This document shows positions 11,289 to 45,463 of a stretch of DNA of 64,000 bases, piece after piece. The first letter of the stretch is position 1, and the number at the start of each line of letters is the position of its first letter. The notes beneath the pieces were generated by a model. The model did not search any database, was not told where the DNA came from, and saw only the letters and a list, made by a program, of their open reading frames with translations. Where the stretch lies: positions 1-64,000 of IMG/VR virus record IMGVR_UViG_3300018004_000004, one strand, 5' to 3'. Position numbers and translations under genes: made by a program.

Positions 11289-11398
11289 GGGTGCATATAC
11301 AGGAGCCGACGAGCTGATCGAAGATCTGACCTCGCTGGTCGAAGGCAATAGCGAGATCGAGATTGTGTCTGCGGAACTATCCCAAGAAGGAGCGTGAA

Positions 11399-13626: not shown

Positions 13627-13902
13627 ATGTTTCTGAATGAGGTGAAGTTTGGAGCCGTTGTTCGCTATAATACCGGCTACTATAGAGTCACAGGACTTCG
13701 TGAAGTGAACGGCGAGATTCGTGTCGAGCTGGCACTGCCAGCAGGCACGGAGCTGTACGTTGTCTCTCCGAAAGAGCTGTTCCATCTGACACCTATTGAG
13801 AGAGAAGAAGGACCTGAAATCAGGAACATATTTGAAGTGGAGATCGCAGAGACAGTAGCTAGACAACTAGCTAGTAGTGGTCATCTAGATCGGGAGGTCT
13901 GA
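13627..13902 (+). CDS. Small beta-rich hypothetical protein; ends in tag HLDREV
   Basis: GGAGG SD; C-terminal motif. Confidence 0.7.
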   Translation: MFLNEVKFGAVVRYNTGYYRVTGLREVNGEIRVELALPAGTELYVVSPKELFHLTPIEREEGPEIRNIFEVEIAETVARQLASSGHLDREV

Positions 13903-24294: not shown

Positions 24295-27200
24295 ATGAAG
24301 AAAATCGAGTACGTAAATGCACTTGATTTCGATCTCGATGAGGTAGAAGTGGAACAGAATGATCAACAGTCCTCACCCGTACAGCCTTATGTTCCGCCCG
24401 CTCCGGTGGTTAAGAAAGCGAAGGTTCATAAAGCAGTGGTGCCCCTCGGAGTATCTGATCATCCATCCGTTACTCTTCACAAGGGTGGCGGCAAGATCGT
24501 CATTACACCGAACGACGTCCATGCCGCAGTTGCCCTTATCGAAATCAGAGAACGAATCGCCCAGCTTGCTAACCCGGTTCTTACGGCTACTCGGGAGAAG
24601 CTAGAGATTCAGTTGCTGCCGGATGTCCAGCCTATGGACTTTGCTCGGGCCACCAGGGCCTGGAGCTTGGTCAATGTGAAGCTGGACGAACATCCGATGG
24701 TAAGACTGCTCGCGCGCTATCACCTGGACGTGACAATCTCTCCATCGTTGGGTAACTGGGTCAAGAAGGAAGAGAAGCGCCTGGCTAAGGAGCTGACTCC
24801 TTTCCTGCTGCCCGACTTCAAGGATGAACGGTCTCTATTCGAGAAGGTAGAGGCTGGTATGGTCCTTGAATGTACCAAGAACTTTGACTTTGATAACCAA
24901 AGGATCTTTACCAAGGGCCAGCGGTATCAGGTGGTTGACACAGCCCGTGGCGGACAAGGTGGAGGCAACGCCGAGGACGCGAAGGAACACCAAGACGGCA
25001 TGGTGAAGATCAGCAAGGTGGCTATTGCACCCGGCTGTAAGATTATCATGGCAGATGACACCGTCTTCCCGTGGACAGTGTTCAACGGCGATTTGGAGAA
25101 CAACTTCCACTATGAAGAGAAAGTCATCTATGAACCTTCTAAGTGTGTACCCGCCAAGTATCCCGGCCTCTTGGCTATGTACCAAAAGCGACTGGATGCG
25201 ATGGGTCTCGAGCTGTACGACCACGTCAAAGTCGACGCTGTACAAGAAGCTCTTAAGCGTGGCACCCTCAATGGTAAACTCATGCGCATGGGAAAGACGT
25301 CGGAGTCTATCGTCTGTGCCATGTTTTGGGGCAGTAAGCGTGTGGCTATTGTTGCGCCACGCAATGCTCGCCTATTCACGGTCAAGGAGTTCGAGAGGCT
25401 CGGGCTCAAGAACTACGTCATTGTTGACAGCATGGAGGACCTCAAGAAACCTGGAACGTTCTATCTCCTGACTTACAGCTGGATGAAGAAGACGTTCGAT
25501 CCTCATCGTGTCTTCCGGCGCAAGGGCCAAAGCTATTTGCACCGGACATACACGGAGAACAAGAAAGAGATCATCGTCGAGCACAAGTGTCCGTTCTGTA
25601 AGCGCTCGCTTGAACGCCTCGAGATTAAGAAGAACAAGACTGAAGGTGGGTTCCTAGTCGAGAAGACTGTTGGCTGGACCAAGGAACGCGGCTATATTTG
25701 CAGGAATCAACTTTGCGACTGCAAGGCCAAGTTCGCTTCTCGTACGGGCGCCCCGATTAATGGTGCAGCCTGGGGATATACGATCGACTCGACGACTCGC
25801 AAGATCAAGAGAGCGAAGCCGATAAAGCTCGGTGGTAAGACTGTTAACATCACATCTTTCACCGGCGCTAAGGTCGATCAGATCGTCCAGAAGAAAGGCA
25901 AGGTCAAGAACGACGAAGGAAAGATGGTTGACGGTCTCATCGAAGAGACCATAACCTTCCAGGATAACTACGTTGGTTGGATTGACTGGGGCCTGAAGTT
26001 CCACAAGGACTGCAAGGACAAGAATACCAAGGGCCGGTATTGCCACGAATGCCACCAAGCAGACGCGGTCTGGATTCCGGCGCCCTACAAGCAGAGAATA
26101 ACTACTGACCGTGGGAAGAAGGTCCATCTCAAGGACTACTTCACCGGAGCAATCATCGATGAGATACATACAATCAAATCATTGGACTCTGACACGGGGA
26201 AAGCAATACGCTCTATACGGGCCAAGCGCCGCATGGGCCTTACTGGGACCCTTATGCCCAATACTCCTGCGGACGCGTTTTGGCCGCTTCATTGGGTGTT
26301 TAAGGGAGGATCAGCGGCATTCCCGTACCATCAGAAAGATGGAGCCACAGAGTTCTACGATCGCTTCTGCGAATACATCAACATCAAGCGTGGGCACGGG
26401 CTGAAAGATAGTCGTAAGATGTTACCCTACTTGAAGAATCCAGTTGCCTTCTGGGAGCTGATGTCTTCAAAGATGGTCCGGAGGAACTACGAAGATGAAC
26501 TCGTTAAAGCCTCTCTCGCAAAGGCCAATCGATACTACCCGAATGTTGAGTTTCATCGCGTGGAATCGGTTATGGATCCAAAGCAAGCGCAGCTCATGGT
26601 GGCTGCAATCAACCACTTCGAGTCGAACTTTAATCAGTACTCTGCTCAGGTACAACAGGCTGGGCATCTCCTCAACCAGGCAATGGTTGTCTCGCAAATG
26701 GTCTACCTCCGAATCGGAGCGACCTGCCCCGAGTACTTCAACGTTAAGCTGAAGAAGGTTGGGAAGGCAGCAGTATATGATGGACCCCTGGGTGGCGGCA
26801 AGATGGCTGATATTCAGAACATCTGTGCCACCAAGGTCGCGGCCAATGAAAAGGTCGTGGTCCTCACTGACTTTGTGGAGATGAGAAAATCACTGGCGAA
26901 GATGCTGTCGGAACATAATCCGATCGTCTTCGATGGTACATGGGATGACGATGAGAGAAACGAGAACTTCGAGGCTTTCCTTGAAGACCCTACTCGGAAA
27001 ATATTCATTGCAGGAACACGTCAGATTCGGGAAGGGACTAACCTGTCTGCCGCCAACACAGTTATTTGTTGCGATCTTTTGTGGGAGCCAGGCCTACAGC
27101 AACAGGCATGGTCTCGTGCGTTTACTCCTACCTCTGAGAATCGTACGTGCAATGTCTACGTCTTGATGGCGAAGAATAGCATCGACGAACATGTCTACAA

Positions 27201-27408
27201 CACTTTTTATGCTAAAGTGGCGGCTGCTGAACAAGCACTTGATCGTAAGGTCATTAACCGTCGCGCTCACCAGATCGATTTGCGTTGGTTCGTTGACCGG
27301 GTGCTTAGCGATCGCGAAGGGCTACTCTCTTACCTTAAGGAAGAAGGAGAGAAAGGCATCTTCGTAACTGAGAAGACCTTCCAGATGATCGAGGATCGAG
27401 ATGTCTAA
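24295..27408 (+). CDS. SNF2-like SF2 helicase/translocase with Cys-rich insert; ends in tag IEDRDV
   Basis: MRMGKT, IIDEIH, LTGTLMPN, EKVVVLT, EGTNLSAANTVI, WEPG..QQAWSR. Confidence 0.85.
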   Translation: MKKIEYVNALDFDLDEVEVEQNDQQSSPVQPYVPPAPVVKKAKVHKAVVPLGVSDHPSVTLHKGGGKIVITPNDVHAAVALIEIRERIAQLANPVLTATREKLEIQLLPDVQPMDFARATRAWSLVNVKLDEHPMVRLLARYHLDVTISPSLGNWVKKEEKRLAKELTPFLLPDFKDERSLFEKVEAGMVLECTKNFDFDNQRIFTKGQRYQVVDTARGGQGGGNAEDAKEHQDGMVKISKVAIAPGCKIIMADDTVFPWTVFNGDLENNFHYEEKVIYEPSKCVPAKYPGLLAMYQKRLDAMGLELYDHVKVDAVQEALKRGTLNGKLMRMGKTSESIVCAMFWGSKRVAIVAPRNARLFTVKEFERLGLKNYVIVDSMEDLKKPGTFYLLTYSWMKKTFDPHRVFRRKGQSYLHRTYTENKKEIIVEHKCPFCKRSLERLEIKKNKTEGGFLVEKTVGWTKERGYICRNQLCDCKAKFASRTGAPINGAAWGYTIDSTTRKIKRAKPIKLGGKTVNITSFTGAKVDQIVQKKGKVKNDEGKMVDGLIEETITFQDNYVGWIDWGLKFHKDCKDKNTKGRYCHECHQADAVWIPAPYKQRITTDRGKKVHLKDYFTGAIIDEIHTIKSLDSDTGKAIRSIRAKRRMGLTGTLMPNTPADAFWPLHWVFKGGSAAFPYHQKDGATEFYDRFCEYINIKRGHGLKDSRKMLPYLKNPVAFWELMSSKMVRRNYEDELVKASLAKANRYYPNVEFHRVESVMDPKQAQLMVAAINHFESNFNQYSAQVQQAGHLLNQAMVVSQMVYLRIGATCPEYFNVKLKKVGKAAVYDGPLGGGKMADIQNICATKVAANEKVVVLTDFVEMRKSLAKMLSEHNPIVFDGTWDDDERNENFEAFLEDPTRKIFIAGTRQIREGTNLSAANTVICCDLLWEPGLQQQAWSRAFTPTSENRTCNVYVLMAKNSIDEHVYNTFYAKVAAAEQALDRKVINRRAHQIDLRWFVDRVLSDREGLLSYLKEEGEKGIFVTEKTFQMIEDRDV

Positions 27409-27914: not shown

Positions 27915-28391
27915 GTGGGCAATCATGAGGGGTATGTGGTTCTGATCAAGAAGCCTGGTGATCCTCTGTTGTATGGGCCGGTAGAATATTCGTTCAGTCT
28001 AGGTGTCCTGCCGAATGAGACGCAGTTGTTGTATGGGCCGGTAGAATATTCGTTCAGTCTAGGTGTCCTGCCGAATGAGACGCAGTATTGGTGGGGCGCC
28101 CTGAACTATTGGGGCCCAGGCAAGCACATAGATGGGCTGAAGAGGGCCCAGGATAGCTTGGACTACTGGAAGAAGGGTCATCCTGACTGGGAGTTCAAGA
28201 TCTGGGACCTGAAAGATCCCATGTTGCCTATCATCATTGATTGGGCATTGTATGAGGATGCCGGGCAACCAGCACAAACGATTAGTGGGGTGAAGGATAA
28301 ATACCATCGTAGAAATCTATCCTTTGCCATGAAGACTGGCCATGATTTTGCTGCCAGCGTCGCGGAGGCTACACGTGATCAAGCCAAGTAA
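27915..28391 (+). CDS. Hypothetical protein with exact 20-aa tandem duplication
   Basis: LLYGPVEYSFSLGVLPNETQ x2. Confidence 0.65.
   Translation: MGNHEGYVVLIKKPGDPLLYGPVEYSFSLGVLPNETQLLYGPVEYSFSLGVLPNETQYWWGALNYWGPGKHIDGLKRAQDSLDYWKKGHPDWEFKIWDLKDPMLPIIIDWALYEDAGQPAQTISGVKDKYHRRNLSFAMKTGHDFAASVAEATRDQAK
27967..28086. repeat. Perfect 60-bp tandem duplication (2 copies)
   Basis: 27967-28026 identical to 28027-28086. Confidence 0.95.
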
Positions 28392-29023
28392 GGATGGTAC
28401 CAAGCTCTGGTTCCTCCCTTATGAGGGGAGCCATGAGCAAGAGATAGAGTTCCCTCTTGTCTATGCACATACCTGTCCCAAGTGTGGTAACCTGGTACAG
28501 GCCTTGTTCCTGACTGATAAGCGGGTCGATCCCAAGCCTTGGGAAGAGATCCTGACTCACCAGCTGGAGAAGGATGGGAAGTACAAGAGGATTATACCTG
28601 GTCGGTCCGACAGGTTCCGTAGCCGTTACACGATCCAGACCATTGGACGAGGGTCCTCCGTCAACGCCGAGCTGATACGCTTCGGCGAACACTTTGAGCG
28701 GAGGGAGGACGTCATCAACGGTAACATCTGTAACTTCATGGCGATAAGCTCGACTATCCCCGAGTACCGGGTGTATGACATGCTTTTGGCTTTGGGCAAG
28801 AATCCTATACAATATGCTATAAAGGATGAGCACTACGAGGGCATCAAGAATAGCCTATTGAATAAGTATGCAGGTAAGGATCAATACGCTTTCGAGCCGG
28901 CCGTCGGCAATGGCCCGGAGTTAGTGCTGATTTCGCGAACCGCATATGGATGGTTCATGGACGAAGCATGCATCAAGTATTACAAGCCGTATCAACCCCC
29001 TGTGAAACCTTAAGGAGACACAC

Positions 29024-29446
29024 GTGAGTGCATATAACGAGATCGAAACACAGTTCTCGGATCAAGACTGTCTAGTTGAAGCCCTGAAGGAGATGGGCTA
29101 TCAACCGCAGGTCAGTGAGAAGCCCCAGAATCTGGAAGGCTATCACGGCGACAAGCGCGAACAGAAGGCCGAGATCATCATTCCGCGGCGCCAGGTTGGC
29201 GGAGCGAGCAATGACGTCGGGTTCAAGAAGAATGCCGATGGGACGTTCACTGCTATTATCAGCGACTATGATAAGAGCACGAACTTCAATCTGAAGAAAC
29301 AGAAAGAACTCAAGGCGAAGTACGCCGAGAAAGTTGCCATGAAGCAGGCCAAGAGAAATGGTCTGAAGTTCATTGGCAAGAAACAGGTCACGGACCAGAA
29401 GACTGGCAAGCCTGTACAGCGCCTACAGTTCGTGACGACCCGATGA
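29024..29446 (+). CDS. DUF1257 (Ycf35-like) protein
   Basis: MSAY..IETQFSD.DCLVEALKEMGY, AEIII, NDVGF.KN.DGTF..IISDYD, YA. Confidence 0.8.
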   Translation: MSAYNEIETQFSDQDCLVEALKEMGYQPQVSEKPQNLEGYHGDKREQKAEIIIPRRQVGGASNDVGFKKNADGTFTAIISDYDKSTNFNLKKQKELKAKYAEKVAMKQAKRNGLKFIGKKQVTDQKTGKPVQRLQFVTTR

Positions 29447-29943
29447 GTAACGGACGCTCGAGACCAAAGGTCTATCTTGCCGGCCCTATCTCCGGGCTGA
29501 CTTATGACCAAGGTCAAGACTGGAGAGTGAAGGTAGCTGAATCGTTGGACCAGCTAGGCATAGATGGTTATTCGCCTCTGCGCGCGAAGAGCTACCTCAA
29601 GAACTTCGGTACGTTGGAACAATCCTACCAGCTGAAAGACCAGCCTGTGGCTTGTCTTTCCTCTGACCGCGGGCTTATGACTCGCGATCGTTGGGATGTT
29701 ACCACGTGCGATGCTATTCTCGTCAATCTTGTTGGTGCCACCCGCATTAGCGTAGGCACCATGATAGAAGTAGGTATGGCTGACATTCTGCGTAAGCCTC
29801 TCGTCCTTGTAATGGAGGAAGGCAATCCGCATGATCATCCAATGCTTCGGGAAGCCACTGGCTTCCGAGTGCCTGATCTGGGAACAGCAGTGGAAGTCCT
29901 GGACAGAATCCTGAATCCAAATATCGGAGGGAATCGTGGCTAA
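29443..29943 (+). CDS. Nucleoside 2-deoxyribosyltransferase-like protein
   Basis: KVYLAGPI, RD..DV..CDAILVNL, SVGTMIEVGMA. Confidence 0.82.
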   Translation: MSNGRSRPKVYLAGPISGLTYDQGQDWRVKVAESLDQLGIDGYSPLRAKSYLKNFGTLEQSYQLKDQPVACLSSDRGLMTRDRWDVTTCDAILVNLVGATRISVGTMIEVGMADILRKPLVLVMEEGNPHDHPMLREATGFRVPDLGTAVEVLDRILNPNIGGNRG

Positions 29944-30124
29944 GACAGTCAACGTTGACATCGATGAAGAGGGAAATGTTTCCGTCGACATCATCGGAGC
30001 TATTGATGGGACCTGTAAGCACGTTGCTGATGCTTTCAAGAAGATCGGCAAGGTGACCAAGGACGTCAAGAAGCCCGAGTATTACAAGCAGCCGAACCAA
30101 AACGTGATTAAGACCGGTCGATAA
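29936..30124 (+). CDS. DUF2997 family protein
   Basis: V.IDEEGNVSVDIIG..DGTC......F..IG.V....KKPEYY. Confidence 0.78.
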   Translation: MAKTVNVDIDEEGNVSVDIIGAIDGTCKHVADAFKKIGKVTKDVKKPEYYKQPNQNVIKTGR

Positions 30125-30311
30125 CTCCGGCCGGCGGGAGGAGCGATGGGGCTAGTGAGCTTGCTTCAAGGTAACACTGTTTACACCCGTCAGGGTACCG
30201 GTAAGGAAGAACTCGATCGCCTTATCGATATGCTTGATGAGCAAGAGATCGAGATTGCGATTGATTATCTGAGCAATCTTTTGCTGTCCCGAGCTCCTAA
30301 GATCCGGAACC

Positions 30312-30647
30312 ATGCCCAACCAAGAAGTTAGTGTCGTCGTTCGCGATGACGGGACTGTGGTCTGCTTGGATCACCCTGAATGCAAATGCTTTAGGGAGAT
30401 GGGATCTGTAAAGACTCGGAGAGCCAGCCATGTGGAACCGTATACGAGAGGCTATCGTATGAGCTTCCACCTACTGAGATGGATTTTCGGGGATCAAGGG
30501 CGAGTATCAGACTGGACCAGGAGTTGGGACGTACTATGGAGAGTGAATCTTACTCCTGTAGGTGGTCCTATTCTGCCTGGCGCCACGATCCTAAGGGAGG
30601 CAGCCCTCAGACGAGAAGTCGAGTGGCTGAATAAGAACCTAACATGA
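30312..30647 (+). CDS. Conserved hypothetical protein of the type often found beside DUF1257/AAA modules
   Basis: VVRDDGTV, RRASHVEP, W.V.L.PVGGPIL, REAAL..EVEWL. Confidence 0.65.
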   Translation: MPNQEVSVVVRDDGTVVCLDHPECKCFREMGSVKTRRASHVEPYTRGYRMSFHLLRWIFGDQGRVSDWTRSWDVLWRVNLTPVGGPILPGATILREAALRREVEWLNKNLT

Positions 30648-30931
30648 ACGTTCCAATCGTAGATGTTTCATTTACGATCGTCGGCCGTGTCAAGTTGGAC
30701 ACTGACCGCGCAATGGAAGATCCCTGGTGGGACCAGTCCGTAAAGGGCTTGAACTTGGATGATAAGATCCAGTTCCAACAGGCGATCTCTAACTACATTT
30801 CGGCCTACTTACGACATGAGAATCTCCTGAGTGAGGTTCCTTGGTCTTGTGGGCCCGCTGATGTATACTCAGTCACAGTTGAGGTGAATAATGGCGGAAG
30901 CAACAACGCAGCCGACGAACGGAGCGTCTGA
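30644..30931 (+). CDS. Hypothetical protein; ends in tag-like ADERSV
   Basis: ATGA-coupled ORF. Confidence 0.65.
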   Translation: MNVPIVDVSFTIVGRVKLDTDRAMEDPWWDQSVKGLNLDDKIQFQQAISNYISAYLRHENLLSEVPWSCGPADVYSVTVEVNNGGSNNAADERSV

Positions 30932-32870
30932 ACATCCTGCATTCATTCAGACTTTCTTCGATAGCTACCGGGCTAAGGAAGCTCACGTCTTCATTTTCCA
31001 TGGAAACGTGAACGACTTCCCGAATAACTCCGGCCGGCGCGGTGATCTGCGCAGGGCTCTCGCTCTATCTTGCGATACTCCAACGATGATGCTGGAGTGC
31101 AAGGACGACGAGCAGAAGAAAGAAGTGAACAAGGTGGCTCGTATTCTGGCGTATTATACGATGTCCAATGGCCTTGAGTTCGCTAGCCCGGAGAGCAACA
31201 ATCTCTGGCGCCAAGTCATGAAGCAGTACATCAAGGACATGATGCCCGCTACGAGCGACACAGCCCTCGATGATCAGATCAAGGATCTGGAAAAGCCGTC
31301 GAACTTTGACATGGCTTTGAACACCTTGAACATCTGGTTCACTGCCTCCAAGAGATTGCATCAACACAATCAGAAGGTTGATGCCTCCAAGAAGGGGAGT
31401 AAGCTCCCTGATCCTCTGTTTACGATCGTGTTCTTCGATGGCGATGCTATCTTCCCGGCCGGCCAGATGTCTCAGCTGGCTAGCGATCGCGCGTCCATTG
31501 TGAACATTCGAAGCTGGGCCCGTGATGAAGCGCTTGGTAACAAGAACCGTGTCATCATAGTGACCCGACATATCTCTGATATCCATGAGTCTATTCGCGG
31601 TGGCGAGTCTGGTGTCAGGGCCATCCTGATTCCCAAGCCCACCTTGAAAGACCGTGAAGAGTGGTTGACCAACTTTGACGCCAGCTTGAAAGAGCGCGCC
31701 CAGAAGGGCTCTCCTCAGAAGCTGGGAGGCAAGGAAGTGACCTGTATTGAATACGCGCCTGGGTTTGATGCCCATACGTTTAGCATTCAAGCGGCAGGGC
31801 TTTCGCGCAAGCAGATGGAAAACATCTTCATGCGTGCCCAGTTGGATCATGAACCCATTGACTTCCCATTGGTCAGAGCTTTGAAGACCAAGGCACTGGA
31901 GGAAGAGTATGGTGGTCTCGTGGATTTCCGCGAACCCGAACACGGGTTTGATAAAGTTGGGGGGCACGAACACCTCAAGCGCTACTTTCAGCGGAAGATT
32001 ATTGCTCCGCTCAAGAAGGGTGACAAGAGGACTTGTTCCCGTGGGGTACTTCTCACTGGACCTCCGGGCACTGGAAAGACGGCCATCACTCTGGCTATGG
32101 CGAAGGAAGCTGGTGTAAACTTCATGATCGCGCACCTCGCGCGATTGTTCGGAGGTCTCGTTGGAGAGACAGAAAGTAACACTCAGAAGTTTATCGAGGC
32201 TGCTGACTCCGCGGCTCCCGTTATCGTATTTATTGATGAACTTGAGTCGGTGCTTTCGGCTGGCCGCACATCTGTCGGTGACTCGGGGACATCGTCTCGT
32301 GTATTCAACTCGATCATGACATGGTTGTCCGATGAATCCCGTTCGGGTCGTATCGTCGTTGTTGGCGCCACGAACCGTCCGGACCTATTGGACTCCGCCT
32401 TGATTCGTTCTGGTCGTTTCGATGCCATTCTGCCCGCGCTGCCACCCGCAGCTGGCGATGCCAAAGGGCGGTTGGAGATCTTAAAGGCCCTGACGAAGAA
32501 ACAAGGATTCAAGTTTGCTCCTGAGCTCTCCAAGACTTTGGAGTCTCATGAGGAAGGTATTGGAAAGATGCTGCATGATCAACGGATATGGACTGGAGCT
32601 GAGATGGAGGTGGTCCTGAAAGAGGCCATCGACAACGCATGCTTCGACAATCGTGGGGCCGTCGGCCTCGCCGATTGGAATCAGGCCTTCCATGACGTGC
32701 TGCCATCTACACGTGAAGTGGAAAAGATGATCGACCTGTCGCTTCTGTTCGTGAACCATCTGGGCTACTGTCCAGAAGATTGGCGTGAACGCGCGCAGAA
32801 GAAGGGTGAGATCATGAGCTCGATCAAATCGGGCTACGAAGACGGGACGATCTCGGACAGAGACGTCTAA
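30891..32870 (+). CDS. AAA+ ATPase (classical clade, Ycf46-like layout: degenerate N-terminal module plus active C-terminal module); ends in tag ISDRDV
   Basis: GPPGTGKT, pore loop GLVGETE, FIDELE, ATNRPDLLDSALIRSGRFD. Confidence 0.92.
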   Translation: MAEATTQPTNGASEHPAFIQTFFDSYRAKEAHVFIFHGNVNDFPNNSGRRGDLRRALALSCDTPTMMLECKDDEQKKEVNKVARILAYYTMSNGLEFASPESNNLWRQVMKQYIKDMMPATSDTALDDQIKDLEKPSNFDMALNTLNIWFTASKRLHQHNQKVDASKKGSKLPDPLFTIVFFDGDAIFPAGQMSQLASDRASIVNIRSWARDEALGNKNRVIIVTRHISDIHESIRGGESGVRAILIPKPTLKDREEWLTNFDASLKERAQKGSPQKLGGKEVTCIEYAPGFDAHTFSIQAAGLSRKQMENIFMRAQLDHEPIDFPLVRALKTKALEEEYGGLVDFREPEHGFDKVGGHEHLKRYFQRKIIAPLKKGDKRTCSRGVLLTGPPGTGKTAITLAMAKEAGVNFMIAHLARLFGGLVGETESNTQKFIEAADSAAPVIVFIDELESVLSAGRTSVGDSGTSSRVFNSIMTWLSDESRSGRIVVVGATNRPDLLDSALIRSGRFDAILPALPPAAGDAKGRLEILKALTKKQGFKFAPELSKTLESHEEGIGKMLHDQRIWTGAEMEVVLKEAIDNACFDNRGAVGLADWNQAFHDVLPSTREVEKMIDLSLLFVNHLGYCPEDWRERAQKKGEIMSSIKSGYEDGTISDRDV

Positions 32871-32877
32871 TAGGAAA

Positions 32878-32907
32878 GGGGCCCAGGAAGAATCGAGCCT
32901 GGGCTCC
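32878..32907 (+). other. Intergenic hairpin (possible terminator or processing site)
   Basis: GGGGCCCAGG-10 nt-CCTGGGCTCC just after the AAA stop. Confidence 0.5.
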
Positions 32908-32915
32908 TACTATTT

Positions 32916-33224
32916 ATGTTCCTCATACACGGCGGTTGTAGTAGCAAAGAGAGCTTCGAGAGATATAAAAAGTGGATAGCTGATGCTTGTCCCAAGGATT
33001 ATAAGTTCCATGAGACTTCTCATCCTGAAGATCCCACGTTTCCTTGTTTGGCTATCACTTTAGTGGATAACATTAACTTTCATCTGACATGGGATGTGAA
33101 GCACACAGTCGTGTCTAAGGATGCTTTGCTTACAGCCTTGGGTCTAAGTACTCAAGAGCTAGAGGTAAAGCTCGGAATGGTTTCAGATCCCGCACTGGAT
33201 GTAGTAGAATCGAGAGAGGTTTAA
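32916..33224 (+). CDS. Hypothetical protein; ends in tag VESREV
   Basis: ORF with C-terminal motif. Confidence 0.7.
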   Translation: MFLIHGGCSSKESFERYKKWIADACPKDYKFHETSHPEDPTFPCLAITLVDNINFHLTWDVKHTVVSKDALLTALGLSTQELEVKLGMVSDPALDVVESREV

Positions 33225-33875
33225 ATGGTATTGCTCATTTCCAACATAGCAAACTGGAATGCTGCATGCAAGAAGTATAAGATCGTTACCTCAGTGCCTG
33301 GGCAGTTCCCGGTAATGATCAGCTTCACCAAGCCTGGCAGTGATACAGATGATATAGATTACGAGCCGAATGCGACTAACATCTGTATTATGTATCCTGT
33401 CCATGCATGCAAGCTCCTGGCCGCCTGCTCCCAACAGCACTTGGGCGCCGCGGTAGATGGTATTACCCTGGTGAAAGCTGCTGCCTCTCTTAAGCCCTGG
33501 CATCAAGGCCTGGGTGGTATAGGCATGCAGAACGTTCAGAAGGCTCCGGCTGGTATCTCTGGTAAGCCGGCGTATGTGCTTGAGAACGAAGAGGATGGCA
33601 CTAAGTCGACGATCACATCCGACAAAGAATACATGGTCGGTGATGTGGTTCTGGTTGACGGAGTCGAGTATACAGTCACGGAAATAACGAAGGTCTTGTC
33701 TGATGGTGTGACGCAAGTCAAAGAAGACAGTGACCTGGACATCATGCCAGAGAAGCCTGGCATGCCCGGCATGGAAGAAATGCCGATCGATCCTACTCTG
33801 TTGGACCAAGCCTCTACGAAGATCGCCGAGGTCGGAGATCAGGGACACGTACTCGACGTCGAGAGAGACGTCTAA
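33225..33875 (+). CDS. Hypothetical protein with acidic C-terminal region; ends in tag DVERDV
   Basis: ORF with C-terminal motif. Confidence 0.75.
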   Translation: MVLLISNIANWNAACKKYKIVTSVPGQFPVMISFTKPGSDTDDIDYEPNATNICIMYPVHACKLLAACSQQHLGAAVDGITLVKAAASLKPWHQGLGGIGMQNVQKAPAGISGKPAYVLENEEDGTKSTITSDKEYMVGDVVLVDGVEYTVTEITKVLSDGVTQVKEDSDLDIMPEKPGMPGMEEMPIDPTLLDQASTKIAEVGDQGHVLDVERDV

Positions 33876-34087
33876 TGTATCCGCCTCTTGGGCCACCTAT
33901 TCCAATGCCTGGTAATCCAAAGATGGGAGTGTTATATCAACACCCCACCGATGGGGAAATAGGTTATTACGGAGAGTTAGGGAGATGGATCCCCTTGAAT
34001 AAAGTAACTACTCCTATTCCCATGGATGCGTTGAGAGTTGAGGAAGTATTGCTCGACAGAGAACTCATTGAAGAGAGAGATGTCTAA
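33875..34087 (+). CDS. Small protein with tail-fibre-like PxxPxxGxLY...W motif; ends in tag IEERDV
   Basis: PGNPKMGVLYQHPTDGEIGYYGELGRWIPL. Confidence 0.7.
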   Translation: MYPPLGPPIPMPGNPKMGVLYQHPTDGEIGYYGELGRWIPLNKVTTPIPMDALRVEEVLLDRELIEERDV

Positions 34088-34416
34088 TGACAGACTGGCA
34101 ACATTATGAGGGGAAGACCTGGAACCAGAAGTATTGGGAGACGTATGATGATGTGCCTTTTGGTCCGCCTCCCAAGCCTAAGCCTCCAGGCGTTCCTAAG
34201 TTTCCACCTCCTCAGAAACCGGATCCAGATCTCGTAGAGAAGTACAAGAAGTATCTCGATGAGCTGGAGAAGAATACGGAGAAGTTTGTACCGTGGGTGC
34301 CGTCAAAGCCCAAGCCGAAACCGAAGCCTAAGCCTAAGAAGAAGCGGAAGCCAAAGGCAGAGAAAGTAGCGCCTCCTCCGCCTCATGATGATACAATAGA
34401 AGAGAGGCAAATATGA
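34087..34416 (+). CDS. Pro/Lys-rich low-complexity protein; ends in tag IEERQI
   Basis: KPKPKPKPKP tract; C-terminal motif. Confidence 0.7.
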   Translation: MTDWQHYEGKTWNQKYWETYDDVPFGPPPKPKPPGVPKFPPPQKPDPDLVEKYKKYLDELEKNTEKFVPWVPSKPKPKPKPKPKKKRKPKAEKVAPPPPHDDTIEERQI

Positions 34417-34576
34417 GTCACTTCCCACACATATGCCACTATTGCCATAGGATTATCTGGCCGTGGCAGGCTATTACCTGGAATCCTCTGTGGAACATCT
34501 GGAACGTCTATGATTACTTCCACCGGCCGACGTGCTGGGAGAAGTGGTTGGACCAGCACGGAACCAAGGGGTCAGA

Positions 34577-35683
34577 ATGATCCGTCTTTGCATGATGGTT
34601 AAGAACGAGTCCGAGAGGATTCGCCCGGCTTTGCAATCCGCCAAGCCTTTTATAGGGCGCTGGTTGATCATCGACACCGGGTCCACGGATGACACCAAGA
34701 ACATTATCCTGGATGAGATGCATGGAATCCCGGGTAATCTTGTTGACCGGCCGTGGGTCGGTTGGACACACAATCGCAATGAGCTCATTGAGATTGCCAA
34801 GGAACCCAGTCCGGCGGACTTCCTAATGCTGCTGGATGGCGATCAAGTAATCGTTCCGCAGACTACCGGCGAGTTGAAGTTGGATCCTGACGTAGCCTAT
34901 TGGGCTATTCATCGCCAGGGAACCACAGAGTTCAAGAAGCCATTCATTATACCGGCCAAGTACAACTGGCATCATGTTGGTGCCACACATGAGTACTTGA
35001 CGTGTGAACCGGATAAACCTAAGGTAGAGTTACTACCTATCGTTATCCAGGAGTCCGGCCGGCCAAAGACGACGGAGTATTTCCTGAACGACGCCAAGAT
35101 CCTCGAGGCGGAGCTGGAGAAGGATCCGAACAACTCTCGGAATGTATTCTACCTGGCTCAGAGCTATCGGGATGCCGGGTCCTACAGCAAAGCCATAGAG
35201 CTCTATCTGAAGAGGGCTACTATGGGTGGCTGGTACGAAGAAGTATGGTATTCTTTGTATCAGGTCGCGGTCCTTGAGATGAAGAGAGGGGACACCTGGA
35301 ACATAGTCATTGCAGATTTCCTGCATGCTTATGACTTCAATCCAAATAGGTCCGAGTCCTTGGGTGCCCTCGCGCGGTATTGCCGGGAGAAGAAGATGTA
35401 CAACCTGGCATACATATTCGCCGAGAAGGCTTGTCAGATTCCCCTCGCAGATGATAAGCTCTTCATGGATAAGAGCTTCTGTGAGTGGCGGAATCGAGAT
35501 GAATATGCCTTGGCTGCTTTCTTCACCGGCCGATTTCATGAGGCAGCCAACACGTGGGCATCTTTGTTAATGGGAGTGAAGGAAGGTCAACATCTTCCTG
35601 ACTCTGAAAAGGAACGTGTTCAAAAGAACTATGAGTTCGCGCGCGAGAAAGTGTTCGCGAGCCCAAGCGTGGAGAAAGCATGA
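34577..35683 (+). CDS. GT2-family glycosyltransferase with C-terminal TPR repeats
   Basis: LCMMVKNE, IDTGSTDDT, RNE, LLDGD, RNVFYLAQSYRD and following TPR helices; start at ATGA 34577. Confidence 0.88.
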   Translation: MIRLCMMVKNESERIRPALQSAKPFIGRWLIIDTGSTDDTKNIILDEMHGIPGNLVDRPWVGWTHNRNELIEIAKEPSPADFLMLLDGDQVIVPQTTGELKLDPDVAYWAIHRQGTTEFKKPFIIPAKYNWHHVGATHEYLTCEPDKPKVELLPIVIQESGRPKTTEYFLNDAKILEAELEKDPNNSRNVFYLAQSYRDAGSYSKAIELYLKRATMGGWYEEVWYSLYQVAVLEMKRGDTWNIVIADFLHAYDFNPNRSESLGALARYCREKKMYNLAYIFAEKACQIPLADDKLFMDKSFCEWRNRDEYALAAFFTGRFHEAANTWASLLMGVKEGQHLPDSEKERVQKNYEFAREKVFASPSVEKA

Positions 35684-37248: not shown

Positions 37249-37348
37249 CCCTGAGTGGTGTATTGGTTTTTGGGCAATCATGCAGGCCGTCCATGGAGCA
37301 CGTCGGTCCTGAATACCGAAGGGCAAGGTTCGAATCCTTGCTTGGGGA
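37249..37348 (+). tRNA. Atypical or degenerate tRNA-like cloverleaf with about 30-nt D-loop insertion; anticodon loop CCTGAAT
   Basis: Acceptor CCCTGAG/CTTGGGG, D-stem GTG(T)/(G)CAC, anticodon stem TCGGT/ACCGA, T-arm CAAGG-TTCGAAT-CCTTG; no encoded CCA. Confidence 0.6.
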
Positions 37349-37356
37349 ATATTCTT

Positions 37357-37623
37357 ATGCCATCACTAATAGCAAATCAACACGATTTACCAGGCCCTGA
37401 ACCACAAGACTACACCAAGATGTTCTCCATTCCTTTGGAGGAACGTTGTGATGCCTGTGAAGGCATGGGTTTAGTTAGGTGGCGCCATTCAATGAATGGC
37501 CTTGACTGGATGAAGTGCTGGATCTGTCATGGGTCTGGACGCGCGCCGGCCGAGATGCTGGAAGCAATGGCCAAAGATAGAGCTCACAAGGCCGAGGTTG
37601 GAGAAGATGACAGAGCAGTCTAA
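37357..37623 (+). CDS. DnaJ-type CxxCxGxG zinc-finger protein; ends in tag-like EDDRAV
   Basis: CDACEGMG and CWICHGSG. Confidence 0.65.
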   Translation: MPSLIANQHDLPGPEPQDYTKMFSIPLEERCDACEGMGLVRWRHSMNGLDWMKCWICHGSGRAPAEMLEAMAKDRAHKAEVGEDDRAV

Positions 37624-37896: not shown

Positions 37897-39153
37897 ATGT
37901 TCAAACTGTTTGAGCACCTCGACAAAGCACTTGTAGGTATGGAGAAGCGTGATGACTGGACAAGCAAATCTGCCAGACTCTGGCCTTCGGAAAGTTCGGC
38001 TGTCCTGCTCGAACCCACAGTTGCGGGTTTTGCCGGGGGCTGTGGACGAAAGGTGTATTACAGGCTCACAGGGGAGAAGACTACCAGCCAAATGGACCCT
38101 GTCGGTGCGCGACGGGTTCGTACTGGAAAGGCTGTCGAAGAAGACACTACGCTCCAGGCTATGGAGGCCGGTCTGCACGTTGCCTCTGGGGTCAGACACT
38201 ACGTGCCAAACATTGATCTGGCCTTTGAGCTGGACCTTGTTGTCCTAGATCCACAATCCAGCCAACCGGTGATATGTGAAAACAAATCGATCTACGGCTA
38301 TATGGCCCAGAAGGAAATCATTGGTGGCCCTTATGCGAAGGGCAAACCAAAGCTCGAGCATGTTCTCCAGACACTCATTTATATCAACGAGATACGTTCT
38401 GGTGCCAACCTCAAGCAAATCATTGCAACTGCGCAAGCGGATAAACCAACTAATCCGCGCAACCGAGTCCGGGTCACAGACGTGAACCTGGGGATGATCA
38501 AAGATGATGCGACCGTGTATGGCAAGATCTGCTACGAGACACGAGACACCTGCCTCACTGCGGAGTTCGATATCGAAATCTACGAGGATTATGATGGCCT
38601 CCACTATCCTCAAGTCAACGGCGATGTTTGGCGCATTTTCACGGTGGAGTCGATTTATGAACGCTTCGAACAGATCCAGGGTTACTTTAACCGATCACAG
38701 GCTGAAGCGATCCGGAGGCTCCAGGAGCAAGGGACAATCCGTCCAGCCTCCTTGCCCGCGGAAGCGTCGGAAGAGGCTGTAATCGCCTGGAAAGGCCAGG
38801 AAAAGGCCTTCTGGGAGAGGGTCGGGGAGGAGATGAGACGCCTACCGGTGTCCTACCTACCCCCAGCAGACTACCGCTACCGGTATACGGACATAGCCAT
38901 CGAAAGCTTTGCTGAGAAGGGCTTTATCGGCAAGACCAAGTTCGCCGAATGGAAGTCCTGGAAGAACGGCAAGAGCCGGAAGTGGAAGGAGTCCAAGATC
39001 GGACCTATCATTGGGGACTGGCAGTGTCGGTACTGCCCCTATAAGTTCCCTTGTATTGCTCTGGAGTACCCAGACCTGGCGCCCATGGTCAACGACGTCC
39101 TGGCCGCCCAGGCAGATGAAGAAGAGTCGGAAGACGCAGAGAGGAAAGTCTAA
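37897..39153 (+). CDS. Cas4/RecB-like PD-(D/E)xK exonuclease with probable Fe-S cysteines; ends in tag-like DAERKV
   Basis: GCGRKVYY, ELDLVV, ENKS, QTLIY, CRYCPYKFPC. Confidence 0.75.
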   Translation: MFKLFEHLDKALVGMEKRDDWTSKSARLWPSESSAVLLEPTVAGFAGGCGRKVYYRLTGEKTTSQMDPVGARRVRTGKAVEEDTTLQAMEAGLHVASGVRHYVPNIDLAFELDLVVLDPQSSQPVICENKSIYGYMAQKEIIGGPYAKGKPKLEHVLQTLIYINEIRSGANLKQIIATAQADKPTNPRNRVRVTDVNLGMIKDDATVYGKICYETRDTCLTAEFDIEIYEDYDGLHYPQVNGDVWRIFTVESIYERFEQIQGYFNRSQAEAIRRLQEQGTIRPASLPAEASEEAVIAWKGQEKAFWERVGEEMRRLPVSYLPPADYRYRYTDIAIESFAEKGFIGKTKFAEWKSWKNGKSRKWKESKIGPIIGDWQCRYCPYKFPCIALEYPDLAPMVNDVLAAQADEEESEDAERKV

Positions 39154-44603: not shown

Positions 44604-45198
44604 TCCACTCTCAGTCTTCGCTATAACAACTGAGCCTGTGGCATGCATCGAGGGGGAGAAGTGTGCAAACTCCCCCTCACATAGTTCCCATCCAGAATGT
44701 AATAACTGCAGGTTTTCGCCTGGGGCGCCGTACTTTATTCGTACGCACCACTGGAAGCCTATGCTGGAGGGTTGGCACCATCGCAAGCTTGAAGAGGAGA
44801 AGCGTCATGCCAAGCGTCAGGCAGCCATTGCTCGTCAAGAGGCCAAAAAGGCGAAAGATCCCACCAAGCAGGCCCGTGTTCGCGCGGCCGCAAGGGCAGA
44901 ACGCAAAACCAATGACCATATCATTAAGTCTACCCGGAACTCAGGGAGGGTAAACCGTGACGGTGATCATCTGTTGTTTGATTCTGTCGTGGTGGATACG
45001 AAACTGCAATCAACGGCCACGGAACCCGTGATTCATCTCAGGGAGTTGGACAAGGTAAGACAAGATGCTAGACGAAATGGCAGGTGTTGCGGGGCTCTTT
45101 GCCTACAAAACAAGACTGGAAGAAGCGTTATTGTGGTTGACGCAGCCGATTTTGCTGCGCTCACCCGCGGCCTCAATCTGGATCAAAAAGGCCTCTGA
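44575..45198 (+). CDS. Zinc-finger plus putative PD-(D/E)xK (Hjc-like) nuclease
   Basis: C..C / C..C N-terminus; NSG..N.DGD....VVVDTK. Confidence 0.5.
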   Translation: MAQPQSLKDNPLSVFAITTEPVACIEGEKCANSPSHSSHPECNNCRFSPGAPYFIRTHHWKPMLEGWHHRKLEEEKRHAKRQAAIARQEAKKAKDPTKQARVRAAARAERKTNDHIIKSTRNSGRVNRDGDHLLFDSVVVDTKLQSTATEPVIHLRELDKVRQDARRNGRCCGALCLQNKTGRSVIVVDAADFAALTRGLNLDQKGL

Positions 45199-45463
45199 CG
45201 ATCCCGATCGCTATTGGGCTCGGCGTATCGGTAGTCAGGATTGGTTTCCAGTGACGGCCGACTGGTTGTACAGTCGTGAGTATGTTTGGTTGTACAGTCG
45301 TGAGTATGTTGAGGTAGATAAACCGTATGCATCTACCTTAGAGTCGGCGCTCAGAGATGATGGAGCCTATACTCTGGCAGGAGAACCTATCAGCATGCCT
45401 GTGAAGGCTAAGGAAGCTACTCCTAAGTACATTCCACCTCTGTTCGAAGAGAGGGAAGTATGA
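45065..45463 (+). CDS. Hypothetical protein (start uncertain); ends in tag FEEREV
   Basis: Contains WLYSREYV x2; C-terminal motif. Confidence 0.65.
   Translation: MLDEMAGVAGLFAYKTRLEEALLWLTQPILLRSPAASIWIKKASDDPDRYWARRIGSQDWFPVTADWLYSREYVWLYSREYVEVDKPYASTLESALRDDGAYTLAGEPISMPVKAKEATPKYIPPLFEEREV
45263..45310. repeat. Perfect 24-bp tandem duplication
   Basis: TGGTTGTACAGTCGTGAGTATGTT x2. Confidence 0.95.

What the first reader, a model, noticed from the sequence alone, without database searches (positions are those of the whole stretch)
29024..34416. DUF1257-DUF2997-AAA+ module followed by a run of tagged genes: candidate reader and cargo locus
Seen: DUF1257 (29024), DUF2997 (29936), a RRASHVEP-type conserved protein (30312) and a Ycf46-like AAA+ ATPase (30891) lie together. 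The ATPase and the next four genes all end in the tag, the gene before it ends in a variant, and the tagged SNF2 helicase is just upstream. Established: Ycf46/Ycf35(DUF1257)/DUF2997 co-occur in cyanobacteria and elsewhere with unclear function, and classical AAA+ hexamers thread polypeptides from a terminus. Inference: the module may be a tag-dependent unfoldase or translocase, with the small partners as adaptors and the ATPase carrying its own tag for docking or autoregulation.
Basis: partly seen in the sequence, partly recalled or inferred. Interest (0 to 1): 0.78.

Follow-up and report, generated by a model that had tools for sequence, protein, structure and literature searches.

The report
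Shared C-terminal tag in jumbo phage
A 215-kb phage puts the same short ending (…Glu-Asp/Glu-Arg-x-Val/Ile) on about 17 unrelated proteins, including a Ycf46-type AAA+ ATPase; the tag is real and evolves lineage by lineage, but nothing yet shows that this ATPase module is what reads it.

Summary
Observation confirmed. DUF1257 (29024), DUF2997 (29936, weak) and a Ycf46-like AAA+ ATPase (30891) are there. The ATPase, the next four genes and the upstream SNF2 helicase all end in [DE]-R-x-[VI].

The tag is real and acts on the peptide:
- 14 strict C-terminal matches against 0.11 expected, about 17 bearers genome-wide
- all six Arg codons used
- bearers are not paralogs
- 7 of 16 have no adjacent downstream start

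Relatives carry lineage-specific versions: …R-x-[LIV] in G002 (Leu in 5 of 13), acidic ends in G001, and "AA" on 23 genes in G003. SNF2 keeps E-[DE]-R-x-X in every lineage.

- The ATPase is two stacked AAA-type domains with no peptide-binding N-domain.
- It bears the tag itself.
- Rhizobium phage L338C has the full module but no C-terminal motif.
- The complex prediction gave no answer.

Unflagged and relevant: the phage encodes a cellular-type ClpP (15376-15978) and a tmRNA, while relatives lacking ClpP encode a Clp-type unfoldase instead. A clamp or other hub-docking motif remains a serious rival.

The parts
24295..27408 (+). SNF2-family helicase, tagged (...MIEDRDV). It is the only protein whose E-[DE]-R-x-X ending is kept in every lineage examined.
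   Evidence: Pfam Helicase_C and SNF2-rel_dom. Ortholog tails are EDRDV, EERSL, NERVL, EDRMD, VERED, EERAS, EERVA and EERLA.
28342..29013 (+). Conserved 223-aa orphan that always follows SNF2. It belongs to the conserved gene order and is untagged.
   Evidence: Orthologs in L004, L006, L013, L010, L009, G001, G002 and G003. No Pfam or PHROG hit.
29024..29446 (+). DUF1257 (Ycf35-like) protein, untagged.
   Evidence: PF06868, E 3.7e-13; phrog_20456. No solved relative. Present near the ATPase in all lineages.
29443..29943 (+). Nucleoside 2-deoxyribosyltransferase, inserted between DUF1257 and DUF2997.
   Evidence: PF05014, E 1.9e-13.
29936..30124 (+). DUF2997-like 62-aa protein, untagged.
   Evidence: PF11211 at 19.6 bits, below the 24.1 cut-off; phrog_23133, E 8.5e-7. 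Genes at the same position in L010, L013 and L014 carry precomputed PF11211 hits.
30312..30647 (+). The 'RRASHVEP' protein, specific to the close clade.
   Evidence: The motif is kept only in L004 and L006. Other lineages have an unrelated zinc-ribbon-like protein at this position.
30644..30931 (+). Conserved ~95-aa partner whose gene abuts or overlaps the ATPase start in every lineage. Its ...ADERSV ending is not conserved.
   Evidence: Alignment A3: 27-60% identity, 10 invariant columns. Gene overlaps seen. AF2 model weak, pLDDT 66.
30891..32870 (+). Ycf46-like AAA+ ATPase: a degenerate D1-like domain (about residues 17-340) plus an active D2-like AAA module (350-620), with a tagged flexible tail (...GTISDRDV).
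   Evidence: PF00004. PDB profile hits to the D2 ring of VAT/p97 at E 1e-91. AF2 model pLDDT 88. Foldseek matches Ycf46 at TM 0.72-0.75 and tandem AAA proteins. Invariant Walker A/B, N495, R506 and R509.
32916..33224 (+). Tagged orphan, 102 aa (...VVESREV).
   Evidence: The L006 ortholog is 34% identical and ends ...LEQREI.
33225..33875 (+). Tagged orphan, 216 aa (...HVLDVERDV). Its last ~10 residues are far more conserved than the rest of the protein.
   Evidence: Orthologs are 28-31% identical overall but end ...HVLD[DV]ER[DA][VI].
33875..34087 (+). Tagged orphan, 70 aa (...LIEERDV).
   Evidence: No family hit.
34087..34416 (+). Tagged orphan, 109 aa, Pro/Lys-rich (...TIEERQI).
   Evidence: No family hit.
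244..681 (+). Tagged WGR-domain protein (...AIEDRAI). Its G002 ortholog is also tagged (...YADRVV).
   Evidence: PF05406, E 2.7e-9; ortholog tail.
13627..13902 (+). Tagged orphan, 91 aa (...GHLDREV).
37255..37623 (+). Tagged 122-aa protein with a DnaJ-type CxxCxGxG zinc-finger-like region (...GEDDRAV).
   Evidence: Weak PF00684 and PF15777 hits. The next start codon is 122 nt away.
37897..39153 (+). Tagged Cas4/PD-(D/E)XK-like 418-aa protein (...EDAERKV). The tag is present only in this phage; orthologs at 60-69% identity lack it.
   Evidence: phrog_1706. Ortholog tails are ...GKKE...AGAA and ...DAAE.
45065..45933 (+). Two adjacent tagged orphans: 45065-45463 (...LFEEREV) and 45460-45933 (...FIEEREV).
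15376..15978 (+). Cellular-type ClpP peptidase, untagged. It is a candidate effector of the tag system.
   Evidence: PF00574, E 4.6e-71, profile positions 5-181 of 182. The sequence shows the Ser, His and Asp motifs. Present on all large contigs of the close clade (one search matched). Nearest cellular ClpPs are 55-62% identical.
8932..12586 (+). Clamp loader (8932-10077), Rad52-family protein (10110-10832) and a probable beta sliding clamp (11363-12586). The clamp is a rival candidate reader.
   Evidence: PF13177 and PF04098. Atlas score 0.96 to DNA_pol3_beta clusters.
34532..35683 (+). GT2 glycosyltransferase with TPR repeats, directly after the tagged run. A speculative alternative reader.
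   Evidence: PF00535 plus TPR families. Orthologs in G002 and G003 but not G001.

Best explanation
Two real features overlap at this locus.

(1) A Ycf46-type AAA+ ATPase. It has two stacked AAA-like domains, of which only the second is catalytic. Its conserved companions are a 223-aa orphan, DUF1257, DUF2997 and a ~95-aa protein that is probably co-translated with it. The set sits between the SNF2 helicase and RecA/primase in the replication region of a 215-kb phage.

(2) A C-terminal short linear motif, hydrophobic-x-E-[DE]-R-x-[VI]-COOH. It is encoded at the end of about 17 unrelated, mostly orphan, non-structural proteins, and the ATPase itself is one of them.

Shown:
- The motif is selected at the peptide level.
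- It is ancestral on SNF2.
- It expanded in one clade of the phage family.
- Its last residue and its set of bearers change from lineage to lineage.

Inferred, and my preferred mechanism: the motif is a degron-type recognition signal. It exposes a flexible C-terminus to an AAA+ unfoldase, which feeds a Clp-type peptidase, so that a set of early and replication-associated proteins shares one route of timed removal. The phage's own cellular-type ClpP would be the peptidase.

The unfoldase or reader is unresolved. It could be a host Clp ATPase, which is the simplest option because the phage ClpP is about 60% identical to bacterial ClpPs. It could also be the Ycf46-like ATPase. That the ATPase carries the tag suggests it is under the same control, whether or not it also reads the tag.
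For: The tag is real and acts on the peptide:
- 14 observed against 0.11 expected.
- Six Arg codons (8 CGN, 8 AGR) and five terminal codons are used.
- 7 of 16 bearers have no start codon within 45-494 nt downstream.
- 28 untagged genes in the window with the same tight junctions lack the motif.
- The bearers are not paralogs.
- The tail of the 216-aa protein is conserved while the rest of it is only 28-31% identical.

The signature is lineage-specific:
- G002 has [DE]R.[LIV] on 11 genes, and 5 of its 13 [DE]R.. endings finish in Leu, against 0 of 15 in G000.
- L013 has three Leu-ended tags.
- G003 has 23 genes ending in AA against 3.0 expected, using all four Ala codons.
- ATPase tail classes form coherent clades.

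Links to proteolysis:
- G000 and its whole close clade carry a full-length ClpP with intact catalytic motifs.
- G002 has a ClpP-like gene flanked by two tagged genes.
- G001 and G003 lack ClpP but encode a standalone AAA_2 + ClpB_D2-small unfoldase. It has a GYVG/GYIG pore loop and an MGF/LGF tripeptide where ClpA/ClpC/ClpX carry their ClpP-docking loop.
- G000 and G003 encode tmRNAs whose tags end ...PLAA and ...YLAAA. The AA signature of G003 therefore copies the classical ClpX degron end (established knowledge: ClpX reads the terminal Ala-Ala and the carboxylate of ssrA).

Tags are gained and lost on otherwise conserved enzymes: Cas4-like here; RecA, thymidylate kinase and the clamp loader in G003. 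That fits a modulatory signal better than an essential docking site.
Against: - No degradation or binding has been measured.
- E-[DE]-R-x-[VI] resembles no known Clp, Lon or FtsH degron.
- SNF2 keeps an E-[DE]-R-x-X ending in lineages without ClpP.
- The ClpP/tag co-occurrence amounts to about one evolutionary event. It rests on four complete genomes; G004 and G005 are incomplete.
- Other large phages with full-length ClpP, and relatives of the G002-type ClpP, show no such tags nearby.
- The G002 ClpP is only 27% identical to that of G000 and appears to have Glu where Asp of the catalytic triad is expected (my reading of the sequence).
- G000 encodes no Clp-type unfoldase, and the Ycf46-like ATPase has no conserved IGF-type ClpP-docking loop.
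Confidence: 0.35

Rival explanations
1. The Ycf46-like ATPase, with DUF1257, DUF2997 and/or the 95-aa partner as adaptors, is itself the tag reader. It unfolds or translocates tagged proteins, and its own tail serves docking or autoregulation. This can overlap with the best explanation if the ATPase hands substrates to the phage ClpP.
For: - It is an unfoldase-class AAA module with intact catalytic residues.
- It is the only unfoldase-type AAA+ encoded in G000 and G002, which have ClpP but no AAA_2 protein.
- It is a core gene present wherever SNF2 carries the E-[DE]-R ending.
- It lies beside tagged SNF2 and, in the close clade, beside a conserved run of tagged genes.
- The [DE]R-type ATPase tail is confined to the clade in which the tag expanded.
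Against: - The module occurs without any tag in Rhizobium phage L338C.
- Ycf46 is cellular and plastid-encoded, and no tag has been reported there.
- There is no dedicated peptide-binding N-domain.
- Pore loop 1 is G-L-V-G, not aromatic.
- No IGF-type loop exists.
- G001 and G003 keep the module with few [DE]R tags.
- In G002 the tagged genes are not clustered at the module.
- The complex prediction gave no answer, which is neutral.
Confidence: 0.2
2. The tag is a non-proteolytic docking motif. It recruits replication, recombination and nucleotide-metabolism proteins to a common hub: the phage beta clamp, a TPR protein, RecA or SSB filaments, or a replication factory.
For: - Bearers with a recognisable function act on DNA: SNF2, a WGR protein and a Cas4-like nuclease here; RecA, PolA-exo, the clamp loader and thymidylate kinase in G003.
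- 13 of 17 bearers lie in the replication region.
- The phage has a clamp loader and a probable beta clamp.
- The motif hydrophobic-I-E-E-x-x-COOH recalls the IEEVD ending that TPR clamps bind (established knowledge), and a GT2-TPR gene follows the tagged run.
- Only positions 0 and -2 are strongly fixed, as in PDZ-type ligands.
Against: - The PolA pieces, the usual clamp clients, are untagged in G000.
- The tag is charged, unlike the hydrophobic QL[SD]LF-type clamp motifs (established knowledge).
- No PDZ domain is found in any of the four genomes.
- The GT2-TPR protein also occurs in G003, which has a different signature, and is absent from G001.
- Tags come and go on conserved enzymes that work without them in sister lineages.
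Confidence: 0.25
3. The tag is an address for packaging into the capsid or for entry into an infection compartment, comparable to encapsulin cargo-loading peptides or PTS1.
For: It is a short C-terminal signal shared by unrelated proteins, many of them small orphans. The AAA+/TPR/C-terminal-tripeptide combination recalls Pex1/6-Pex5-PTS1; Pex6 is among the fold matches of the ATPase.
Against: The bearers are replication-type enzymes and early-region orphans, not virion-module genes. No compartment or shell gene was identified, and there is no direct evidence.
Confidence: 0.07
4. There is no protein signal. The shared ending is a by-product of a ribosome-binding site or translational-coupling sequence for the next gene, or of tandem duplication of one gene.
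For: Nine of 16 tagged genes abut or overlap the next start codon, and AGR-coded versions (GAGAGR) look purine-rich like a Shine-Dalgarno site.
Against: - Half of the Arg codons are CGN.
- Seven bearers have no start within 45-494 nt.
- 28 untagged genes with the same junctions lack the motif.
- The reading frame is always the same (all).
- There is no paralogy among bearers.
- Tails are conserved across diverged orthologs.
Confidence: 0.02

Closest known systems
ssrA/tmRNA tag and natural C-terminal ClpX degrons (LAA-type; MuA RRKKAI-type)
   Same: A very short C-terminal peptide in which the last residues matter, shared by many unrelated proteins and read by an AAA+ machine. The phage family carries tmRNA, ClpP or a Clp-type unfoldase. 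The relative G003 uses the very ending ...AA on 23 proteins.
   Different: Here the tag is encoded in each gene rather than added by tmRNA. Its sequence (E-[DE]-R-x-[VI]) matches no described degron class. Neither degradation nor a reader has been shown.
Cyanobacterial and plastid Ycf46 / Ycf35 (DUF1257) / DUF2997 gene set
   Same: The same three families occur together, and the ATPase model superposes on plastid Ycf46 over its full length (TM 0.72-0.75).
   Different: The phage version is embedded in replication genes and has extra conserved partners (223-aa and 95-aa proteins). Within one clade it carries a C-terminal tag. No tag is reported for the cellular module, whose mechanism is unknown (PMC13683863).
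Vps4 MIT domain with ESCRT-III C-terminal MIM motifs; CbbX with the RbcL C-tail; katanin/spastin with tubulin tails
   Same: Classical-clade AAA+ ATPases that act on the C-terminal tails of their substrates.
   Different: Those ATPases have a dedicated reader domain (MIT) or a defined single substrate. This ATPase has only a degenerate D1-like domain in front of the motor.
Hsp70/Hsp90 IEEVD-COOH bound by TPR carboxylate clamps; PDZ-domain C-terminal ligands
   Same: An acidic hydrophobic-I-E-E-x-x-COOH ending. Positions 0 and -2 are fixed while position -1 is free. A TPR protein is encoded next to the tagged run.
   Different: The last residues differ (R-x-V, not V-D). No PDZ domain is present in the genome. 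The TPR protein does not track the tag across lineages.
HbYX C-terminal tails of proteasomal ATPases
   Same: An unfoldase-class ATPase with a conserved, flexible C-terminal tail in genomes that also encode a self-compartmentalised peptidase.
   Different: The peptidase here is ClpP, which is docked by IGF-type loops rather than by tails. The tail motif differs and is shared with many non-ATPase proteins. No proteasome or HslV gene is present.

Membership tests
Classical AAA+ ATPase (PF00004), Ycf46-like subgroup | Walker A, Walker B, sensor-1 and the second region of homology with arginine fingers | tested here: met
   GPPGTGKT, D449/E450, N495 and R506/R509 are invariant across 61 homologs. 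PF00004 at E 8e-33.
Classical AAA+ ATPase (PF00004), Ycf46-like subgroup | Full-length architecture like Ycf46: an N-terminal non-catalytic alpha/beta domain followed by a single active AAA module | tested here: met
   AF2 model at pLDDT 88. The best full-length matches are plastid Ycf46 proteins, TM by hit 0.72-0.75 over residues 17-654. The N-half aligns with D1 of Pex6, Cdc48 and Rix7.
Classical AAA+ ATPase (PF00004), Ycf46-like subgroup | Aromatic pore loop 1, typical of processive unfoldases | tested here: not met
   Pore loop 1 reads G-L-V-G-E (L423, V424, G425), so the first position is Leu rather than an aromatic residue (sequence). This does not exclude threading.
DUF1257 (PF06868, Ycf35) | Profile match above the Pfam gathering score | tested here: met
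   50 bits against a cut-off of 22.2; confirmed in the genome search.
DUF2997 (PF11211) | Profile match above the Pfam gathering score | tested here: inconclusive
   19.6 and 18.9 bits against a cut-off of 24.1. Supporting evidence: phrog_23133, and PF11211 hits on the genes at the same position in L010, L013 and L014.
ClpP (PF00574, peptidase S14) | Full-length profile match and the Ser-His-Asp catalytic motifs | tested here: met
   E 4.6e-71 over profile positions 5-181 of 182. The sequence contains GQCASMAA, VLIHQP and DCDRDY. It is 55-62% identical to bacterial ClpPs.
C-terminal degron system of the ssrA/ClpXP kind | A short conserved peptide at the extreme C-terminus of unrelated proteins, under selection at the peptide level | tested here: met
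C-terminal degron system of the ssrA/ClpXP kind | A cognate unfoldase and peptidase are available | tested here: inconclusive
   A phage ClpP is present. G000 has no phage Clp-type unfoldase, and the Ycf46-like ATPase lacks an IGF-type loop. The host is unknown.
C-terminal degron system of the ssrA/ClpXP kind | Tag-dependent degradation of the bearer | not testable with these tools
   This needs half-life or in vitro degradation assays.
Sliding-clamp-binding motif | A clamp is present, the motif resembles QL[SD]LF-type hydrophobic peptides, and the polymerase carries it | tested here: not met
   A probable clamp and a clamp loader are present. However, the motif is charged and both PolA pieces are untagged.
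PDZ-domain ligand | A PDZ-domain reader is encoded in the genome | tested here: not met
   PF13180 was not found in G000-G003. Only this one PDZ family was searched, and a host reader is not excluded.

The most novel reading that the evidence does not exclude
This phage family runs a private C-terminal address code that evolves over time. The tag (E-[DE]-R-x-hydrophobic) is read by the two-ring Ycf46-like ATPase together with its small partners (DUF1257, DUF2997, the 95-aa protein). The ATPase unfolds tagged early and replication proteins and passes them to the phage's own ClpP, forming a proteolysis system orthogonal to the host's. Sister lineages have re-coded it to ...AA plus a phage Clp unfoldase. 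If true, this would also give the first mechanistic function for the Ycf46/Ycf35/DUF2997 module of cyanobacteria and plastids.
Probability: 0.12. Interest if true: 0.9.

Novelty: new variant of a known kind. Interest (0 to 1): 0.66.

Why it matters
Short C-terminal signals read by AAA+ machines are well known: ssrA, MIM motifs and PTS1, for example. I found no report of a phage that writes one such signal into about 5% of its own genes, nor of sister lineages that swap the signal (R-x-V/I, R-x-L, ...AA) while also swapping which half of a Clp protease they encode.

If the tag is a degron, it would reveal proteome-wide, phage-programmed protein turnover. It would also provide compact orthogonal degradation tags for engineering.

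Either way the tag supplies a ready-made list of co-regulated orphan proteins in an uncultivated jumbo phage.

Tried and rejected
- Ribosome-binding-site or translational-coupling artefact: rejected on codon diversity, junction distances and untagged controls.
- Paralogy of the tagged genes: rejected.
- Complex prediction of ATPase + DUF1257 + DUF2997 + the 70-aa tagged protein: no answer (score 0.01, partner pLDDT 45). Not used as evidence.
- Phage collection: no close relatives. The best ATPase hits cover only the AAA core at about 27% identity, and DUF1257 gave no hit. Mycobacteriophage Corndog has the ATPase but neither DUF1257 nor DUF2997.
- Five distant Ycf46-like phage loci (L034, L036-L039) lack DUF1257, so they could not add to the 'module without tag' test.
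- ClpP as a general correlate of the tag: not supported. There are 0 tags among about 380 genes flanking full-length ClpPs of other large phages, and none near relatives of the G002-type ClpP. The G002-type ClpP was not found on the other Leu-tag contigs.
- No proteasome/HslV and no PDZ_2 domain in G000-G003.
- DUF1257 has no solved relative and no informative fold neighbour.
- The model of the 95-aa partner was too weak for a fold search.
- The 235-aa protein that sits beside tagged genes in both G000 and G002 gave no informative match.
- tmRNA tag identity: the G000 tag ends ...PLAA, not the ERDV-type ending.
- Literature searches found no description of such tags and no mechanism for Ycf46.

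Full report
WHAT IS THERE. The window is the first 64 kb of a single 215,395-bp virus contig that carries about 31 tRNAs and a tmRNA. Nearly all genes of the window are on the + strand and encode replication, recombination and nucleotide-metabolism functions. These include a clamp loader, a Rad52-family protein, a probable beta clamp, UDG, ClpP, a split PolA, an SNF2 helicase, dUTPase, thymidylate kinase, a Cas4-like nuclease, RecA, ribonucleotide reductase and a primase-helicase.

The flagged genes check out:
- DUF1257 at 29024-29446 (E 3.7e-13).
- A weak DUF2997 at 29936-30124 (19.6 bits, below the Pfam cut-off). A PHROG match and the PF11211 hits on genes at the same position in other lineages support it.
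- A classical AAA ATPase at 30891-32870.

The 'RRASHVEP' protein is conserved only in close relatives.

THE TAG IS REAL.
- The ATPase and the next four genes end ...DRDV...SREV...ERDV...ERDV and ...ERQI. SNF2 ends ...EDRDV.
- Genome-wide, about 17 of roughly 300 ORFs end in [DES]-R-x-[VI], usually preceded by E/D and a hydrophobic residue.
- The strict motif occurs 14 times at C-termini against 0.11 expected from its internal frequency. Arg at position -2 is the strongest positional signal (p 3.5e-7).
- Six tagged genes lie in a row (permutation p<1e-5), and 13 of 17 lie in the first 46 kb.

THE SELECTION IS ON THE PEPTIDE.
- All six Arg codons are used (8 CGN, 8 AGR), along with five terminal codons.
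- Seven of 16 bearers have no start codon within 45-494 nt downstream.
- 28 untagged genes in the window with the same overlapping junctions show nothing similar.
- The bearers are not paralogs.
- The 216-aa protein is 28-31% identical to its orthologs, yet keeps ...HVLD[DV]ER[DA][VI].
- The ...ADERSV 'variant' on the gene before the ATPase is not conserved.

THE ATPASE.
- A profile of 61 full-length homologs matches the D2 ring of VAT/p97/Cdc48 at E 1e-91 over residues 350-620.
- Walker A/B, sensor-1 and both arginine fingers are invariant. Pore loop 1 is G-L-V-G.
- The AF2 model (pLDDT 88, pTM 0.79) has a low-confidence tail.
- It superposes best, over its full length, on plastid Ycf46 (TM 0.72-0.75). 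It also matches tandem AAA proteins, with its N-half falling on their D1 domain.

'Ycf46-like' is therefore right. It also means there is no separate peptide-binding N-domain. A ~95-aa protein whose gene abuts or overlaps the ATPase start is conserved in all lineages, so it is the most plausible cofactor. Its model was too weak to interpret.

THE FAMILY.
- Homologs of the ATPase down to about 40% identity sit on many 140-226-kb contigs.
- The gene order is conserved: PolA, SNF2, 223-aa protein, DUF1257 (one or two copies), DUF2997, usually a radical-SAM gene, the 95-aa protein, the ATPase, then RecA and primase-helicase.
- ATPase tails fall into classes that form coherent clades. All [DE]R-type tails lie in one clade (19 of 61, support 100/98). 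AA tails occur in only one other well-supported clade (100/100; 12 of its 19 rows). Acidic tails fill most of the rest.

Whole genomes show matching genome-wide signatures:
- G000: [DE]R.[VI]; 15 genes ending [DE]R.., 1.7 expected.
- G002: [DE]R.[LIV]; 13 genes, 1.6 expected, 5 of them ending in Leu. Leu ends 0 of 15 in G000; my Fisher calculation from the counts gives p about 0.013.
- L013: three Leu-ended tags.
- G001: a few F-x-[DE]-R-x-[DE] endings.
- G003: 23 genes ending in AA against 3.0 expected, with all four Ala codons used.

SNF2 ends E-[DE]-R-x-X in every lineage. Other bearers differ between lineages, and tags come and go even among close relatives.

I found no positive evidence beyond adjacency, and several points weigh against it.
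- Rhizobium phage L338C has AAA+, DUF1257 and DUF2997 together. It has no C-terminal motif: 0 [DE]R.. endings, and its best positional p-value is no better than the internal control.
- The ATPase always carries its own genome's signature, as a client would.
- G001 and G003 keep the module with few [DE]R tags.
- In G002 the tagged genes are dispersed.
- The single complex prediction returned 'no answer' and is not evidence either way.
- The converse test could not be run, because every family member found has the module.

WHAT ELSE COULD READ IT?
- Window 15376-15978 encodes a full-length ClpP with catalytic motifs. It is present on all large contigs of the close clade, as shown by matching contig lengths. 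It is 55-62% identical to bacterial ClpPs.
- G002 has a divergent ClpP-like gene flanked by two tagged genes.
- G001 and G003 lack ClpP. Instead they encode a ~355-aa AAA_2 + ClpB_D2-small unfoldase, with a GYVG/GYIG pore loop and an MGF/LGF tripeptide at the position of the ClpP-docking loop.
- G003 also has a tmRNA whose tag ends ...YLAAA, so its 'AA' signature mimics the ssrA degron end.

Taken together this points to Clp-type proteolysis as the process the tags feed. The link is weak, however. G000 and G002 share one origin of the tag. G004 and G005 are incomplete. ClpP-bearing phages outside the family have no tags. SNF2 keeps its ending in genomes without ClpP.

A docking motif for a replication hub (probable beta clamp, GT2-TPR protein) is a serious rival. 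Against it, the PolA pieces are untagged, the motif is charged, no PDZ_2 domain was found, and the TPR protein does not track the tag.

VERDICT.
- The module is a genuine Ycf46-type set, with two extra conserved partners.

The literature searched describes neither such phage tags nor a mechanism for Ycf46.

Noticed in passing
window 15376-15978: A full-length cellular-type ClpP peptidase (E 4.6e-71) lies in the early/replication region, 55-62% identical to bacterial ClpPs. It is conserved on all large contigs of the close clade.
   Followed up: yes
G001:155380-156444 and G003:178401-179471 (L107:15380-16444, L130:18401-19471): Relatives without ClpP encode a standalone Clp/Hsp100-type unfoldase (AAA_2 + ClpB_D2-small) with an MGF/LGF loop. 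In both genomes a protein of about 1,645 aa follows. Among the four complete genomes, ClpP and this unfoldase are mutually exclusive.
   Followed up: partly
G003 (loci L122-L132), whole genome: 23 of 273 ORFs end in Ala-Ala (3.0 expected), including RecA, thymidylate kinase, a PolA-exo piece, the clamp loader and the Ycf46-like ATPase. The same genome has a permuted tmRNA whose tag ends ...YLAAA.
   Followed up: partly
genome 63.6-73.5 kb (tRNA-Met at window 63610-63698; tmRNA at 73138-73483, outside the window): A cluster of about 25 tRNA genes plus a tmRNA with tag peptide AEFEELPLAA. Six more tRNAs lie at 189-210 kb.
   Followed up: partly
window 30644-30931: A ~95-aa orphan is conserved in all lineages, with 10 invariant columns. 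Its gene always abuts or overlaps the ATPase start, so it is a likely cofactor of the ATPase that has no family assignment.
   Followed up: partly
window 8932-12586: A clamp loader (DNA_pol3_delta2), a Rad52-family annealing protein and a 407-aa orphan. Pfam misses the orphan, but it is most likely a divergent beta sliding clamp.
   Followed up: partly
P0015-P0017, P0043, P0054, P0096, P0102 (ATPase homologs); SNF2 orthologs in L008 and L013: Several homologs of the ATPase carry intein or homing-endonuclease insertions (Hint, LAGLIDADG) and are about 1,000 aa long. The SNF2 orthologs in L008 (1,377 aa) and L013 (1,295 aa) carry LAGLIDADG hits.
   Followed up: no
genome 157734-161407, minus strand (L012): A second small cluster of tagged orphans (...EEREI, ...DDRQV, ...EEREI) surrounds an untagged 235-aa protein. 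The only ortholog of that protein, in G002, also sits next to two tagged genes there.
   Followed up: partly
window 16156-17229 and 58459-59145; genome about 194.0-195.3, 200.1-200.9 and 208.7-209.4 kb (L133): RNA-repair and translation-related genes shared only with G002: an RlaP-type nucleotidyltransferase, a YpsA/DprA-like SLOG protein, an RNA ligase, a Thg1-like tRNA-His guanylyltransferase and a peptide deformylase.
   Followed up: no
window 20091-21476 and 21928-22914: DNA polymerase A appears split into separate exonuclease-side and polymerase-side genes, here and in the relatives (L009, L010, L013).
   Followed up: no
window 34087-34416: This tagged 109-aa protein is largely Pro/Lys repeats (PKPKPK...KKKRKPK), so it is probably a disordered or nucleic-acid-binding protein.
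   Followed up: no
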